DNA of 53,524 nucleotides, taken from assembly GCF_000315625.1 (NCBI RefSeq), contig NW_005434642.1:647744-701267 (forward strand), read 5' to 3'. Below, piece by piece: positions 21,661 to 27,733 of the stretch; position 1 is the first letter of the stretch, and each line of letters opens with the position of its first letter. The notes beneath the pieces are model-generated. The model searched no databases and was not told where the DNA came from. It worked only from the letters and a program-made list of their open reading frames with translations. Source of the stretch: Guillardia theta CCMP2712 (Eukaryota; Protista; Cryptophyta). The position numbers and the translations under genes were made by a program.

Positions 21661-22768
21661 ATGTGGAGGACCCTTCAACCAGATCTCGTGCTCGCGTTCA
21701 CGATGGGGCTACACGAGCGCCTTGGTGAGGGCTCGCCTGTACAGATCCTGACAGCAGACATCATTGAGCGCGAGATCGCCCGTGTCCTGCTGTGGTCTTG
21801 TGGCCAAATCGCAAATCTTCATGGTGAGGTGGTAGAGTTGAAAGGACATTTTCGGCTTCCCCATTTCCTTACCATCGATGAAGAGGGGAACATTTTTGTT
21901 TTGGACGAAGAGTTGGAATCCATCCTGACCTTCAGCCCTCATGGCGCGCTGGTGCAGAAGGTCAAGTATGATACCAAGGTACTGCAGGTCCCTCGAGGGC
22001 TGGTGGGTGACCGAGGCCAGCTCTTCACGTGCGACTGGGGCATGCACTATGTGGTCAAGCTTGCAGCATGGTGGCCAACTGGAAAGCTGGACAGCGTCGA
22101 GATCGATCGATCGGGCAAGTTGTGCTATCCCTACGGGGTCGCGATGACGAGCGAGCGGGATTTGGTGGTGACCGACTCCGGGAGGTCACGGGTTGTTGTC
22201 ATGAAGCGAGGAGGTGGCGAGATCAGCATCGAGAGCGAGGCCTTTGTAGAGCCCATGTCAGTAGTTGTTGACAAGGAAGACAACATCTACGTGACTGGTG
22301 AGAGAGGAGGAGGAGGAGGACGAGGAGGATGACGTCGGACGCCGCAGATAGGGAGGAGAACTTGTCGCAGGGGCCGGTAGGGAAGGTGATACTAATGACG
22401 CTGAGTGGAGAGCTGGTCCGGAGCTTCACTTCATGGTTCGACTGTGAGAGGAAGACGCTGGTTCCTCTCGGTGAGGAGCTAGCGATCGCTCTAGATCCCT
22501 GGGGATACATCTTCATCTCCGACTATCTCAACGGAACAGTCATGTGTCTCAACTCCGACTTTGAGGGGCAAGGGTGAATACTGTGTTGCTTGCTTCCCTT
22601 CCTTCCCTCCTCATTCTTCTTGTCTGCAGATACTCAGAGTTCGATGGCTCTGAACTGAAGCCCTTTGGACTTGTGTGCGACGCTGGGGGCAACTTGTTGC
22701 TTACTGACGAGAGGCAAGCACGGGTGCTAATGATACCTCACTCCTTCTTCCGGCAATCTACGACTTGA
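21661..22768 (+). CDS. NHL-repeat beta-propeller protein with short N-terminal F-box-like motif
   Basis: NHL units FRLPHFLTIDEEGNIFVLD, LCYPYGVAMTSERDLVVTD, FVEPMSVVVDKEDNIYVTD, KPFGLVCDAGGNLLLTD. Exons 21661-22297, 22348-22573, 22630-22768. Confidence 0.85.
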
Positions 22769-22854: not shown

Positions 22855-23902
22855 TCAGTAAAACAGGTCGATGTTATCCTCCACGGTAGAAGTGCTCTCT
22901 CCCATCTCCTCCCCTTGCGCCAGCCGCTCTTCCACACACCCCCTTGGCTTTCTCAGTACACATTCCACTCACTTCTGCCTGTACATAGCCAACGCCTTCT
23001 CCAGCTCAGCTCGCTTCTGCTTGTCCGACTTGATCCTCTCCATGTACTGGTCGAGCTGTTTCTGCATGCCCATCTGCAGCACCTGAAGCCGCCCAGCAAG
23101 TCAGACAGGCAGAGAGGAGGAGGAGGAGGAGGGTAAGCATGCTGGTGATGGTAGAGACCTGTAGCTTTGCCACAGCGGCAGCTTCCTCATGGATCATCTC
23201 CTCTACAAACTCTGCGAGTTGCAACTTGAATCAGACTGCAGTCGCACATGCATCCTCGTTCCTCCTCCAGTCTTACTCCTTTGCTGCGCCCCTCTTCGTC
23301 CTCAACCTTTCTACTCCCCTCTTCCTCCCTCACCAGGGTCTCTGCTCTGAATCGCCATGATCTTGCCAGTGACGACAGGGCAGGTGGGAGATCGCACGTT
23401 GTGCTCGTAGGCAGGATCATCCTTAGGGCCCCACTCGGCGAGCTCGAGGTTGCAGAAGGCGCAGAGCACGCGGTCCTTGTACTGGTCGTTGGGGGAGAAG
23501 TAGAAGCCTTGCGACGCGAGCGCTGCTGGGGTGGCGAGGGGGCGCATGGCGGCAGCGTGCGGCCACTGTCTGAAGGTCTTGAGGCGAGAGTCGTAGGTGG
23601 ACATGGCATAGTTTTGGATGGAGGCGAAGAGCGAGTCGTTCTTGCAGGTATGCCGCATAGTCTCCTGCATGCTGAACCCCGCCTGAGCTAGCGACGCTGT
23701 AAGCTCCCGCTCTTCTCGCTCCAACCTGACAAACCAGCGCTGTCATGTTCTCCCTCCTTGCAACCTCAGCCTACCGGTCAATCTCGTCGCGAAGCAGCAT
23801 GCTCTCTTTCTTGTATGCCGCCAACTCTGCTGACAGACGGTCTGACTCCTCATTGGCCAGCAAGAACTGCTTGGAGGCTTCTTGTAGTTCAAGTCCCGCC
23901 AT
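22855..23902 (-). CDS. BIR-domain (IAP/survivin-like) coiled-coil protein; 5' end may extend to ~24230
   Basis: RLKTFRQWP...LASQGFYF...DRVLCAFC...WGPKDDPAYEH...SPTCP with C-x2-C...H...C ligands. Flanking coiled-coil exons; spliced end EDNIDLFY*. Confidence 0.85.
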
Positions 23903-24909: not shown

Positions 24910-27733
24910 TTAGCTTTGCTTGCTTTGCGAGTCCGAGCTGGTGTCTGAGTGAGGCAAGGGAGGGTCGACAGTGAGCAGCTGAGAGAGGCTCGAGCTTTGA
25001 GGCCCCCGTATCCCCTGCCTGCCGCTCCTGCTGTAGTCGAAGTGAGTCTTGGGGGGCACGAAGACAAGGTCGTCGATCAGAGCTGGGTCCTGCACGCGAG
25101 GATCATTACAGGACAGCGACATGCTTCTGTGCCGCAGCATCGCGGAAGAGTCTCTGCTCCTGCTGCTCGTCTTGACAGGTGCAGACGTCGGTTTCGAGGC
25201 TGACTCAGGCGTCTTGCTCTCAGCAAAGGATTTCGATCGACTGCGATGGACGAACGTGCTGGAAGGCACTCGATTGATCACTTGCTGTTGCGCTCTTGAG
25301 TCGACGAGTCTCGAAGAGTCCTCAAAAGTTCCGCTCGCCTTGTCCTGGTCTTGTTCTGCCGGTGGCTCCAAGACTGCTGCATGCAGAAGCTTGGCCGCTG
25401 GGATCGGGCCGAGAGAGGGCGGGAGAGGCTCCGGAGCAGACGGCACTTGGGGGTTGTGGGAGAGGCTGCGAGTCACCTTGACGTCTTTGGTTGCCTGTTG
25501 GCTGTTGAGGAGAATTTTCCTGCCGATTGCTGCATCAGCTTGCGATGGGGCTGGTTGACTGGAAACTCCTAGTTGAGTGCCTGGGGGAGGGTCAAAGGGG
25601 AGCACATGGTCTGGTTTGAGACTGACTCACCTAGGACCTTCTCAAGGGACTGAGTGAAGGACTTGAAATCTTGTCTCAGCGCCTTCACGTCAGCTTCGAT
25701 CGATCTCAGGCGAAAGTCGTTCTCGTCCTCAACTATCTGACTGACGTGAATGAACTCTTCCTTGCTGATTTGATGATCCTTGTCAGAGTCCAGCCGCGCA
25801 ATCACGAGTGGATGGAGAGAAGGAGGAATGCCCAGCAGCTCCAGAGCTTCCTTGGCTTCATTCAGGTCCAACACGCCATTCTCGTCCTGGTCGACCTGAT
25901 GAAAGATATCGAGGACTCTGCCCGTGCCTCTGTTTGAGTAGCCCCACGAGTTGATTATATCTGACTGCTGTGCCGCCTGCATCGCAAGCAACTTCATCAT
26001 CAGAAACAGCGCAGAGAACTCCTTGCTCGACGTCTCTGCCATCGCATTCGACATCTTCCTCAAAGCGTATCGACGAAGCTCTTCTTTCATGATCTCTTGG
26101 AACTGATCACGGCTGAACTCGCCGTTGCTGTTGCAATGCCTTCCTCCTTCTGTCAGAAACTCGAAGTCGTCCTGCAGGATGTGGATCGGCGAAGAGGTCG
26201 GAAGCTGCTTGAGGCCTCGCTGGAACTCCTCGAAGTTGAGGCCACCAGACCCGTCCTTGTCCAACCGCTCGTAGGTCTCCGAGATGCGCTGCGTTAGATC
26301 CCTTTCGTTGACGAACAAGGCAAGATGAGCTGAGAGAGGATCGAGCACGCTCTTGGAGCGACGTAGCTCCTTCTCCTTCTCCTCTTGCTCTCGCTTCTCA
26401 GTCTCTATCTGAAGCTTCTCGGCTTGAATCGAGGTGATGAATTCATCCAGCAGCACCGCCACAACCACGTTGATGAGGAAAACTCCAGCGATGAGCACGT
26501 AGCTCACGAAGAAGAAAGAGGTCCAGTAGTCGAATTGAGTCTTCATCTCCGGTCCGTCGAAGATCGACCGTGTTACTGCAGAGGCCCAGCTGCATGATCA
26601 TCGTCAGTGCTGAAAGGCGCGGTCTCAGTCAAAGTTGATCGTTACCTGTCTCCTGTGACAACTTGAAACATCTGCGATACCCCAGCAAGGTCAGAACCGA
26701 TTAGGATAAGTGATTGTGTCACCGTGAAGAGCGATCTCGAGAAGGTTCCGAAGAAAGCTTCACTTCTTGCGGAGAAGAAGTGAGTTCCGAGAGCGGCCCA
26801 AATACAAGTAACAAGAGCGAGGATGATGAAGCTGTTGGCAACAGGAATGACGGCAGAGGCCAGGGCTGTGATGATTCTGTTGAGAGATTTCAACTTGCGG
26901 AAGACTCGAGCGACTCGGAAGACTCGGATAAGTCGAAACACTTTGAGCGAGGGAATCCCCGACGCAAGAACCGTCAGCAGCGACAAGCTGACAATGATTA
27001 CATCCAGGAGATTCCATCCATCAGATAAAAACTCCTTGCACCAGTTCTTGGACTTAGCAAACAAGTTGACAGCGAGTTCGAAGCAGAAAACAGAGGCAAA
27101 GAAGATGTCCATCTGATCAAAGAGGTTTTGAGTTGGACTGCCATCTTCTGGCAGAATCTCTGCTTGCACAAGATCCATAGCAAAGCTCGCCATGATGAGG
27201 CTTGCAATTACAGTCTGAGTTATTGAATTCTCATAAGCGCGCTTAACACGCAGTCTCCACAGTGCCAACGGTCCTTTTTCAGTTCTGTTCGCCTCTTCTT
27301 GCACCCAACGTGCATGTTTCGATTCCCTTTCAATGGCTTCCGACCATTTGCCAGCATCTGTACGGAGTGCTCTATGAATATAGGCTCTGCCGCTATTGAA
27401 TCCGTCAGGAATAGTCTCAATGATGATTTCCTGGTAGTCATCGTTGCTTTCGTCTTCATCCTCTTGCAGAAAGACCTTGTTGATCTCGTGCAAGGGGATG
27501 TGATCGATGATCAAGTCTGTCGAAGGGTTCGCGAAGTACAAGCACTCCTGCGTCAAGACGGCCAGTCGCGGCATCCATGTGATGGTGGAGCCGACGCGTT
27601 TCTTATCGATGAGTCCTTCTCTGATCCGCGAGGACTCAGGTGGCAGCGTGAAACTTTTTGCCATGTCTTCGGGCACTACATTCTCGTGAACGATGTGCCC
27701 TGCATTTCGTATCGCGGAGATGGCTGCTGCCAT
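24910..27733 (-). CDS. Single-domain voltage-gated cation channel (EukCat/BacNav-like) with N-terminal PH domain and C-terminal EF-hands
   Basis: PH-like IREGLIDKK...WMPRLAVLT...IIDHIPL...KWSEAI. S3 DGWNLLDVIIV; S4 LKVFRLIRVFRVARVFRKLK; pore FTMFQVVTGDSWAS; S6 FLINVVVAVLLDEF. EF loops DKDGSGGLNFEE, DQDENGVLDLNE, DSDKDHQISKEE. Exons 27733-26723, 26671-26646, 26589-25631, 25568-24910. Confidence 0.9.

What the first reader, a model, noticed from the sequence alone, without database searches (positions are those of the whole stretch)
24910..27733. PH-domain + EF-hand single-domain voltage-gated channel with TGDSWAS filter
Seen: one 6TM unit with an Arg/Lys-rich S4, a filter split across two introns (TGD-S-WAS), an N-terminal PH-like domain and at least three canonical EF loops. 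Known: bacterial NaChBac-type filters are TLESW, Asp substitution generally favours Ca2+, and algal EukCat channels are single-domain. Inference: a homotetrameric, possibly Ca2+-permeable channel integrating voltage, phosphoinositide (PH) and Ca2+ feedback. A PH domain on this channel class is unusual.
Basis: partly seen in the sequence, partly recalled or inferred. Interest (0 to 1): 0.72.

Follow-up and report, generated by a model that had tools for sequence, protein, structure and literature searches.

The report
PH-domain voltage-gated cation channel, cryptophyte
This Guillardia theta gene encodes one subunit of a bacterial-style, one-repeat voltage-gated cation channel with a PH domain in front and a calcium-sensor tail; it is one of about 45-50 such genes in this genome, a cryptophyte-wide design I found in no paper.

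Summary
On the minus strand, 27733-24910, lies a four-exon gene. It encodes one 6TM Ion_trans unit (Pfam E 6e-26) with five Arg at every third position of S4.

- **Pore:** it reads TGD-S-WAS. The TGD sits on a 26-nt micro-exon between introns of 51 and 56 nt. A transcript-derived Hanusia phi orthologue (75% identical) reads this stretch uninterrupted.
- **N-terminus:** it is a true PH fold (AlphaFold pLDDT 89; 215 Foldseek PDB matches at E<=1e-3, the listed top 50 PH or PH-like folds).
- **C-terminus:** three canonical EF loops plus one degenerate loop follow S6.

This gene is not a one-off:
- About 45-50 loci in this genome share the design.
- About 90 of the top 150 representative clusters carry the PH module.
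- Every named PH-bearing relative is a cryptophyte (seven genera).
- This scan has already reported the family several times on other DNA of this genome.

The channel domain groups (100/100) with haptophyte EukCatB/NavEh-type channels, away from BacNav-like and four-domain channels. Those relatives lack the PH domain.

The natural Asp filter matches the engineered EhEUKCATB1 E305D mutant, which gained Ca2+ permeability. The first 12 residues resemble the NavEh pore-plugging N-helix.

Function is inferred, not shown. RNA support in G. theta is two reads. Verdict: a new variant of a known kind, of moderate interest.

The parts
26723..27733 (-). Exon 1 (337 codons): N-terminal helix, PH domain, S1-S5, first part of the pore helix (ends ...SLFT)
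   Evidence: ORF and translation; Pfam Ion_trans E 5.7e-26; 75% identical over its full length to Hanusia phi P0006
27698..27733 (-). N-terminal helix MAAAISAIRNAG, a candidate N-type inactivation 'ball'
   Evidence: AF2 helix 2-10 at low pLDDT; similar starts in cryptophyte paralogues and in haptophyte TGESW channels such as P0198 and P0195; NavEh N-helix function in PMC9114117. The role here is inferred.
27230..27625 (-). PH domain: seven strands (residues 38-123) and a long C-terminal helix (124-168) that runs towards S1
   Evidence: AF2 pLDDT 89; Foldseek PDB, 215 hits at E<=1e-3, e.g. TAPP1 and DAPP1 with TM 0.77; profiles hit only PH domains in the PDB; Pfam PH above cut-off in paralogues
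26882..27223 (-). Voltage-sensor domain S1-S4; S4 at 26882-26947 (one Lys, five Arg at every third position, then two Lys)
   Evidence: Read directly from the sequence; aligned to the voltage sensors of Nav/Cav channels and NavEh 7x5v
26723..26842 (-). S5 and the start of the pore helix
26672..26722 (-). Intron 1 (51 nt, GT..AG, in frame and without a stop, so it looks like coding sequence)
   Evidence: Absent from the Hanusia transcript P0006 and from paralogues L007 and L009; L002 has a stop codon here; P0001, 98% identical in the exon, diverges here
26646..26671 (-). 26-nt micro-exon: MFQVVTGD plus the first two bases of the Ser codon (first half of the selectivity filter)
   Evidence: continuous in P0006
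26590..26645 (-). Intron 2 (56 nt, GTAACG..CAG), splits the filter's Ser codon
   Evidence: P0006
25631..26589 (-). Exon 3: second half of the filter (S)WAS, S6 (26439-26528), helical neck (26358-26438), and a four-EF-hand domain (loops at 26226-26261, 26103-26138 degenerate, 25857-25892, 25755-25790)
   Evidence: Pfam EF-hand_1 E 3.8e-16 with three stretches, and the end of Ion_trans; conserved in paralogues; coordinates
25581..25630 (-). Intron 3 (50 nt, GTGAGT..CCCCAG), predicted only
   Evidence: Splice consensus, and it joins in frame to the 231-codon downstream ORF. No transcript evidence. Without splicing the protein would end 21 codons later, at the stop at 25569-25571.
24910..25580 (-). 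Exon 4: Ser/Pro-rich, probably disordered tail of 222 codons, stop TAA at 24910-24912 (predicted)
   Evidence: ORF; no Pfam hit; not conserved in paralogues or the orthologue; one RNA read lies here

Best explanation
The gene encodes one subunit of a homotetrameric, depolarisation-activated cation channel. It belongs to the lineage that also holds the haptophyte EukCatB/NavEh channels.

Shown here:
- Four-exon structure, with the third intron and the last exon predicted only.
- A single 6TM unit with a fully charged S4.
- The pore sequence FQVVTGDSWAS.
- A genuine PH fold between a short N-terminal helix and S1.
- A helical neck after S6, followed by a four-EF-hand domain with three canonical Ca2+ loops.
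- Membership of a family of about 45-50 genes in this genome, seen by name only in cryptophytes.

Inferred:
(a) The Asp at the high-field-strength site makes the pore permeable to Ca2+ as well as Na+. The engineered E305D mutant of EhEUKCATB1, which has the same TGDSW core, behaves this way.
(b) The EF-hand domain makes gating depend on cytosolic Ca2+, as proposed for EhEUKCATB1.
(c) The hydrophobic N-terminal helix acts as an N-type inactivation plug, as in NavEh.
(d) The PH domain sits in the 'chain' between plug and voltage sensor, and its C-terminal helix is predicted to run on towards S1. It may hold the N-terminus at the inner membrane leaflet through acidic lipids, and so could tune gating or inactivation, or set where the channel sits in the cell.
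For: - Gene model.
- Ion_trans and EF-hand hits.
- No further repeat.
- PH fold.
- Closest solved single-domain channel is NavEh 7x5v (76 bits, E 4e-20, against 57-61 bits for NavMs- and NaChBac-type chains).
- Careful ML tree: PH-bearing channels, haptophyte TGESW channels and two-domain relatives separate 100/100 from four-domain and BacNav-like domains.
- The E305D experiment and EF-hand/Ca2+ dependence of EhEUKCATB1: bioRxiv 10.1101/2020.04.29.068528.
- NavEh N-helix plug: PMC9114117. Similar N-termini in paralogues and haptophyte channels.
- Conserved basic residues K44/K45, R56, R116 and R121 at PH positions aligned to the lipid-binding TAPP1.
- Family size and taxa.
- Organism identity: the paralogous locus is 100% identical to GUITHDRAFT_100126 of G. 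theta CCMP2712.
Against: - No electrophysiology exists for any PH-bearing member.
- RNA support in G. theta is two reads in about 6% of one run, with no junction reads and the strand not settled.
- Pfam PH does not score this protein itself.
- The PH lipid motif lacks its middle basic residue (Met54), so high-affinity phosphoinositide binding is doubtful.
- The N-helix has one Arg (R9) where NavEh has five (R9-R13), and mutating those five abolished inactivation in NavEh.
- Ion selectivity cannot be read reliably from one filter residue.
- The exons were never joined for a search or a fold. The orthologue P0006 stood in for the full-length protein.
Confidence: 0.72

Rival explanations
1. The PH domain is not a lipid sensor. 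It would be a protein-interaction or assembly module, for example docking on the EF-hand domain, the cytoskeleton or a trafficking or flagellar partner, or simply a rigid spacer in the inactivation chain.
For: - Only a minority of PH domains bind phosphoinositides tightly (general knowledge).
- The K-Xn-(K/R)-X-R motif is incomplete here and in most of the family.
- The best Foldseek hits include the GRK2 PH domain, a Gbeta-gamma binder, and talin and PTB folds, which bind peptides.
- The family's nearly invariant residues T107 and G115, and the common N113, are not the usual lipid-binding positions.
Against: Basic residues at the canonical beta1, beta2 and beta7 positions are conserved in 79-96% of family members. 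The domain is attached directly to a membrane protein, so it is held next to the inner leaflet.
Confidence: 0.35
2. The channel is Na+-selective like the characterised coccolithophore EukCatB channels, despite the Asp in its filter.
For: The filter otherwise matches the Na+-selective pattern (T-G-x-S-W, and the WAS of NaChBac's LESWAS). The channel's nearest characterised relatives are Na+ channels.
Against: The single E-to-D change in EhEUKCATB1 gave Ca2+ and Ba2+ currents without Na+. Diatom EukCatA channels with Asp at this site conduct both ions.
Confidence: 0.15
3. This copy is a silent or decaying member of a large, recently expanded family and makes no working channel.
For: Only two RNA reads were laid. 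The family holds broken copies elsewhere in the genome, with matches that carry several stop codons. The tail exon is not conserved.
Against: - All conserved exons are open.
- All gating charges, the filter and three EF loops are intact.
- An orthologue in another genus is 75% identical and is transcribed.
- A 98%-identical copy from another sample differs mainly inside the intron.
Confidence: 0.07

Closest known systems
EukCatB / NavEh (EhEUKCATB1 of Emiliania huxleyi; PDB 7X5V; Helliwell et al. 2020 preprint; Zhang et al. 2022, PMC9114117)
   Same: - Single 6TM subunit that would form a homotetramer.
- T-G-x-S-W filter core, and a C-terminal EF-hand domain after a helical neck.
- A hydrophobic N-terminal helix.
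- Best single-domain PDB match, and the same major clade in the tree (100/100).
   Different: - NavEh is 542 aa with about 75 residues before S1 and no PH domain. The window protein has a full PH fold there.
- The filter has Asp where NavEh has Glu (TGDSWAS against TGESWSE).
- The N-helix has one Arg instead of five.
- There are four EF motifs plus a long disordered tail.
BacNav channels (NaChBac, NavAb, NavMs)
   Same: One-repeat voltage-gated channel; the pore helix FQVVT-x-x-SWAS is almost identical to NaChBac's; a helical neck follows S6.
   Different: Bacterial, with no PH or EF-hand domains. The filter is TLESW. They are weaker matches (57-61 bits) and fall in a separate clade. This is a nuclear eukaryotic gene with introns.
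Diatom EukCatA channels (PtEUKCATA1, OsEUKCATA1; PMC6509283)
   Same: Single-domain eukaryotic voltage-gated channels. Some have Asp at filter position 0 and conduct both Na+ and Ca2+.
   Different: Reported as a different clade, with a coiled coil and no EF-hand or PH domain. No labelled EukCatA sequence was in my tree.
CatSper
   Same: Single-domain subunits with a T-x-D-x-W filter; Ca2+ channels.
   Different: CatSper channels are heterotetramers with many accessory subunits, weakly charged S4 segments and no PH or EF domain on the pore subunit (general knowledge). Not tested phylogenetically here.
Plant/animal two-pore channels (TPC1)
   Same: Voltage-gated Ion_trans units regulated by cytosolic EF-hands; S6 and the neck give the best PDB hits for exon 3.
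   Different: TPCs have two repeats per chain, with the EF-hands between them. The window gene has one repeat.

Membership tests
Voltage-gated ion channel superfamily (Pfam Ion_trans PF00520) | Six transmembrane segments with a charged S4 and a pore loop, matching the family profile | tested here: met
   PF00520 E 5.7e-26 (91.6 bits, cut-off 25) on exon 1, and the S6 part on exon 3; 114 PDB channel chains matched
EukCatB (Helliwell 2019/2020) | Single-domain channel (one 6TM unit per polypeptide) | tested here: met
   One Ion_trans unit; no other repeat in the window or beside the gene
EukCatB (Helliwell 2019/2020) | Phylogenetic placement in the clade of haptophyte, cryptophyte and pelagophyte channels, apart from EukCatA, EukCatC, BacNav and CatSper | tested here: inconclusive
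   The orthologue P0006 and the haptophyte TGESW channels share a clade at 100/100, away from BacNav-like and four-domain channel domains. No labelled EukCatA, EukCatC or CatSper references were available, and the paper's sequence lists are not held.
EukCatB (coccolithophore type, Na+-selective) | Glu at filter position 0 (TGESWSE) | tested here: not met
   The filter is TGDSWAS. The characterised type has Glu, and its E305D mutant loses Na+ selectivity.
EukCatB / NavEh | N-terminal helix with a hydrophobic start followed by an Arg cluster (inactivation plug) | tested here: inconclusive
   MAAAISAIR... matches the hydrophobic part and R9, but the R9-R13 cluster is missing
PH domain (Pfam PF00169, PH-like clan) | Seven-stranded beta sandwich capped by a C-terminal helix with a conserved Trp | tested here: met
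   AF2 pLDDT 89, strands 38-123, helix from 124, W130; Foldseek PDB hits TAPP1, DAPP1, PEPP1, PLEKHA7 and GRK2
PH domain (Pfam PF00169) | Score above the Pfam gathering threshold | tested here: not met
   No hit on the window protein even at E<=10. Paralogues at 36-46% identity in this region score 28-31 bits against the 25.1 cut-off. Membership therefore rests on homology to those paralogues and on the fold.
Phosphoinositide-binding PH domains | Basic motif K-Xn-(K/R)-X-R in the beta1-beta2 region | tested here: inconclusive
   K44/K45 and R56 are present and conserved; the (K/R) position is Met54 here and Gln/Asn in the family; R116 on beta7 is 96% basic. Lipid binding cannot be tested with these tools.
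EF-hand | 12-residue loop with Asp at 1, Asp/Asn at 3, Asp/Ser/Asn at 5, a hydrophobic residue at 8 and Glu at 12 | tested here: met
   Three loops fit and a fourth is degenerate (His at 1, Gln at 12); Pfam EF-hand_1 E 3.8e-16, EF-hand_7 E 3.3e-14
Two-pore or four-domain channels | Two or four Ion_trans repeats in one polypeptide | tested here: not met
   Single repeat; the neighbouring ORFs are unrelated

The most novel reading that the evidence does not exclude
The PH domain lies between an N-type inactivation plug and the voltage sensor. It would then make fast inactivation, or voltage-sensor movement, depend on inner-leaflet phosphoinositides. That would be a lipid-controlled ball-and-chain in a BacNav-type channel. 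It would let a cryptophyte combine membrane voltage, lipid signalling and Ca2+ in one small subunit, and the roughly 45-50 paralogues would provide differently tuned versions.
Probability: 0.2. Interest if true: 0.8.

Novelty: new variant of a known kind. Interest (0 to 1): 0.55.

Why it matters
Single-domain eukaryotic voltage-gated channels (EukCats) are a recent discovery, and only a few diatom and coccolithophore members have been studied. The window gene belongs to a much larger, unstudied branch in which a PH domain is fused in front of the voltage sensor. I found this combination in no paper on voltage-gated channels.

If the PH domain binds lipids, these would be compact channels that sense voltage, lipids and Ca2+ together. 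The gene also offers a natural test of the Glu/Asp selectivity switch that was shown by mutagenesis in EhEUKCATB1.

There is a practical point as well. The 26-nt micro-exon carrying half of the filter is easy to miss. The public model of a paralogue, GUITHDRAFT_100126, leaves out the pore helix and this half of the filter. That may explain why the family has gone unremarked.

Tried and rejected
- **Three-exon model.** My first model treated 26722-26672 as coding, because it is in frame and has no stop. Comparison with a Hanusia fragment and with paralogues showed it is an intron.
- **Single-sequence AlphaFold.** The N-terminus alone gave a useless model (pLDDT 39). Only the run with a 54-sequence alignment was used.
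- **RNA reads.** The four runs that hold the stretch are DNA and collinear with the genome. The one RNA run gave two reads and no junctions, so splicing rests on homology.
- **Tail exon.** Exon 4 against the orthologue's tail gave E 0.27, which is not evidence.
- **Giant-virus origin.** I checked this for the intronless metagenomic relatives of the P0009 cluster. IMG/VR gave no match, and the contig's neighbouring genes gave no clue.
- **Paper supplements.** The supplement of PMC6509283, which would list the G. theta EukCatB identifiers, is not held.
- **Literature.** Searches for a PH domain on EukCat or cryptophyte channels found nothing relevant.
- **Joined protein.** The exons were never joined. 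Each was searched by reference, and the full-length orthologue P0006 served as proxy. So there is no full-length fold, tetramer model or complex test of the window protein itself.
Full report
**Where and what.** The window is contig C32:647744-701267 of an 87.1-Mb, 669-contig assembly. A paralogous locus in the same assembly (L004) is 100% identical across exons to GUITHDRAFT_100126 of Guillardia theta CCMP2712. The organism is therefore this cryptophyte alga. The finding lies on the minus strand.

**Gene model.** Translation of the three minus-strand frames first suggested three exons. Two comparisons showed that an in-frame, stop-free stretch (26722-26672) is really an intron:
- A Hanusia phi fragment and then the full Hanusia phi orthologue P0006 read ...SLFTMFQVVTGDSWASAVTR... 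without it. P0006 is 855 aa, comes from the EukProt transcriptome set, and is 75% identical over all 337 codons of exon 1.
- Paralogues L007 and L009 lack the stretch, and L002 has a stop codon in it.

The model is:

| Feature | Coordinates | Note |
|---|---|---|
| Exon 1 | 27733-26723 | 337 codons |
| Intron 1 | 26722-26672 | 51 nt |
| Micro-exon | 26671-26646 | 26 nt, MFQVVTGD plus AG |
| Intron 2 | 26645-26590 | 56 nt |
| Exon 3 | 26589-25631 | 319 full codons plus split codons at both ends |
| Intron 3 | 25630-25581 | 50 nt, predicted |
| Exon 4 | 25580-24910 | 222 codons, stop TAA |

All introns are GT..AG. The total is about 888 residues. The last intron and the tail exon are predictions. 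The tail is Ser/Pro-rich, has no Pfam hit, and is not significantly similar to the paralogues' or the orthologue's tails. Each was searched by reference, and P0006 served as the full-length stand-in.

**Transcription.** The four runs that hold the stretch are DNA, and their contigs are collinear with the genome, introns included. The one RNA run laid two reads, one in exon 1 and one in exon 4, from about 6% of the run. There were no junction reads. Expression in G. theta is therefore weakly supported. The orthologue in Hanusia comes from a transcriptome.

**The channel.**
- Pfam Ion_trans matches residues 171-346 of the first ORF (E 5.7e-26) and the S6 part in exon 3.
- S4 reads LKVFRLIRVFRVARVFRKLKSL: one Lys, five Arg at every third position, then two more Lys. 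The acidic partners are present in S2 (FELAVN) and S3 (LLDVIIV).
- The pore reads FQVVTGDSWAS, very close to NaChBac's pore helix and LESWAS filter as quoted in the EukCatB preprint.
- No second repeat lies in the window. The flanking ORFs are unrelated.
- Among solved structures, the four-domain Nav and Cav chains score highest in total, but only by adding up their repeats (each repeat scores 38 bits or less). The best single-domain match is the Emiliania huxleyi channel NavEh (7x5v, 8j7h; 76 bits, E 4e-20), ahead of NavMs- and NaChBac-type chains (57-61 bits).

**The PH domain.**
- Pfam finds nothing in residues 1-170 of this protein, even at E<=10. PF00169 does score above its cut-off on four paralogous loci and on the relative P0002 (28-31 bits against 25.1). 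Those sequences are 36-46% identical to the window protein in this region.
- Profiles of the family's N-termini match only PH domains in the PDB: 14 of 14 hits at E<=1 with 9 sequences, and 24 of 24 at E<=0.01 with 54 sequences. The best is PLEKHA6 at E 1e-6.
- AlphaFold without an alignment failed (pLDDT 39). With the 54-row alignment it gave pLDDT 89 and pTM 0.75: seven strands (38-123) and a C-terminal helix from 124 that runs unbroken to 168, just before S1.
- Foldseek against the PDB gave 215 matches at E<=1e-3. The listed top 50 are PH or PH-like folds: the GRK2 PH domain, TAPP1 and DAPP1 (TM 0.77, rmsd about 3 A), PEPP1, PLEKHA7, ArhGAP9, and some talin and PTB folds.

The fold is therefore settled. 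Lipid binding is not. Across the family, basic residues are conserved at the canonical positions: K44 84%, K45 60%, R56 79%, R116 96%, R121 80%. R56 aligns with the key beta2 Arg of TAPP1. However, the middle basic residue of the K-Xn-(K/R)-X-R signature is Met54 here, and Gln or Asn in most relatives.

**The EF-hand tail.** After S6 comes a charged helical neck (ITSIQAEKLQIETEKREQEEKEKE). Then come four EF motifs: three canonical loops and one degenerate loop. The whole region is conserved in the paralogues.

**The N-terminus.** The protein starts MAAAISAIRNAG. The Hanusia orthologue starts MAAAIAAIRHAA. Other paralogues start with similar runs of small hydrophobic residues followed by a few basic ones. 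Haptophyte channels with the EhEUKCATB1-type filter TGESWSE start the same way but carry a strong basic cluster, for example MAAAIRAIRRQNKRKK. In NavEh, residues 2-13 form a helix that plugs the open gate and causes fast inactivation, and the Arg9-Arg13 cluster is needed for this (PMC9114117). The window protein keeps the hydrophobic part and R9 only. A plug function is a reasonable but unproven inference. If it is right, the PH domain sits in the 'chain'.

**Family and relatives.**
- Within the genome, a profile of the PH-type N-terminus finds 52 matches at about 45-50 loci. Nearly all coincide with Ion_trans matches.
- In the 1.84-billion-protein representative library the query has 6,431 hits at E<=0.001. 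Of the best 150, about 90 single-domain representatives carry the same PH module.
- Every PH-bearing relative that has a name is a cryptophyte: Guillardia, Hanusia, Geminigera, Cryptomonas, Hemiselmis, Rhodomonas and Proteomonas. The rest are unnamed metagenomic sequences.
- An ESM Atlas look-up likewise finds clusters annotated Ion_trans plus PH plus EF-hand.
- Haptophyte TGESW channels have no PH module.

A careful ML tree of 62 channel domains (LG+G4, ultrafast bootstrap / SH-aLRT) gives these results:
- PH-bearing channels, haptophyte TGESW channels and a set of two-domain relatives separate from four-domain channel repeats and BacNav-like sequences at 100/100.
- The channels without PH (haptophyte plus two-domain) form one clade (99/92).
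- The PH-bearing ones form four supported groups around it, so a single gain or loss of the PH domain is compatible with the tree. The PH label forms one group in 48% of bootstrap trees.
- The larger quick tree agrees in outline.

No labelled EukCatA, EukCatC or CatSper sequences were available. Formal placement in 'EukCatB' as defined by Helliwell et al. (PMC6509283) is therefore likely but not proven. That paper does state that EukCatB includes cryptophytes and that G. theta was surveyed.

**Function.** The nearest experimental anchor is EhEUKCATB1. It is a fast, voltage-gated, Na+-selective channel whose currents need Ca2+, which the authors link to its EF-hand pair. Its E305D mutant (TGESWSE to TGDSWSE) conducts Ca2+ and Ba2+ without Na+. 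The window protein, and most of the PH-bearing family, carry that Asp naturally. The most likely reading is a depolarisation-activated cation channel that passes Ca2+, with Ca2+ feedback through the EF-hand domain, N-type inactivation, and a PH domain that couples the N-terminus to the inner leaflet or to a partner. Only the architecture is shown. Selectivity, Ca2+ dependence, inactivation and lipid sensing are inferences.

**Novelty.** Full-text searches found the EukCat and NavEh papers but nothing on a PH domain in this channel class. Automatic annotation already lists PH plus Ion_trans plus EF-hand for the paralogue GUITHDRAFT_100126, so the combination exists in databases but not in print. 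This scan has already reported the family at least seven times on other DNA of the same genome, with follow-up notes that reach the same conclusions. I read those after my own tests, and they agree. This gene is thus one typical, intact member of an undescribed subfamily of a known channel kind.

Noticed in passing
L004 (G000:C3:1231535-1235575), about 2380-2700: The public protein model GUITHDRAFT_100126 (P0181) of a paralogue jumps from ...AALATHLF straight to SWASAV. It leaves out the pore helix and the micro-exon MFQVVTGD, which the locus encodes in frame. The public model therefore lacks half of the selectivity filter.
   Followed up: yes
P0009 cluster; locus L011:1322-4027: A 900-aa intronless relative (N-terminal EF pair, PH, channel with TGDSWAS, EF tail) occurs in 57 near-identical copies on 5-10 kb marine metagenome contigs. 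One member is labelled as coming from a Promethearchaeia (Asgard) MAG on a 1.7-kb contig, which is probably a mis-binned eukaryotic contig. IMG/VR gave no match.
   Followed up: partly
P0010, P0013, P0016 and about 15 more representatives: Two-domain (two-pore-like) relatives with TGDSW or TFDSW filters in both repeats and no PH domain group with the haptophyte EukCatB-type channels (99/92). Their organisms are unknown.
   Followed up: partly
G000, about 45-50 loci (e.g. C17:79855-81042, C292, C166, C140, C53): Many family members lie in tandem or in clusters, and several matches carry multiple stop codons, so the expansion includes broken copies.
   Followed up: no
window 23311-23724 (-): A 137-aa ORF has the look of a BIR (IAP-repeat) zinc-binding domain (Cys-x2-Cys ... 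His ... Cys pattern). It lies just downstream of the channel gene.
   Followed up: no
window 21661-22332 (+): A 223-aa ORF has repeated motifs that resemble NHL repeats.
   Followed up: no
P0001 (ENA, 346 aa): A copy 98% identical to exon 1, from another sample, diverges from the window exactly inside intron 1. This fits an allele or strain variant and relaxed constraint on the intron.
   Followed up: partly
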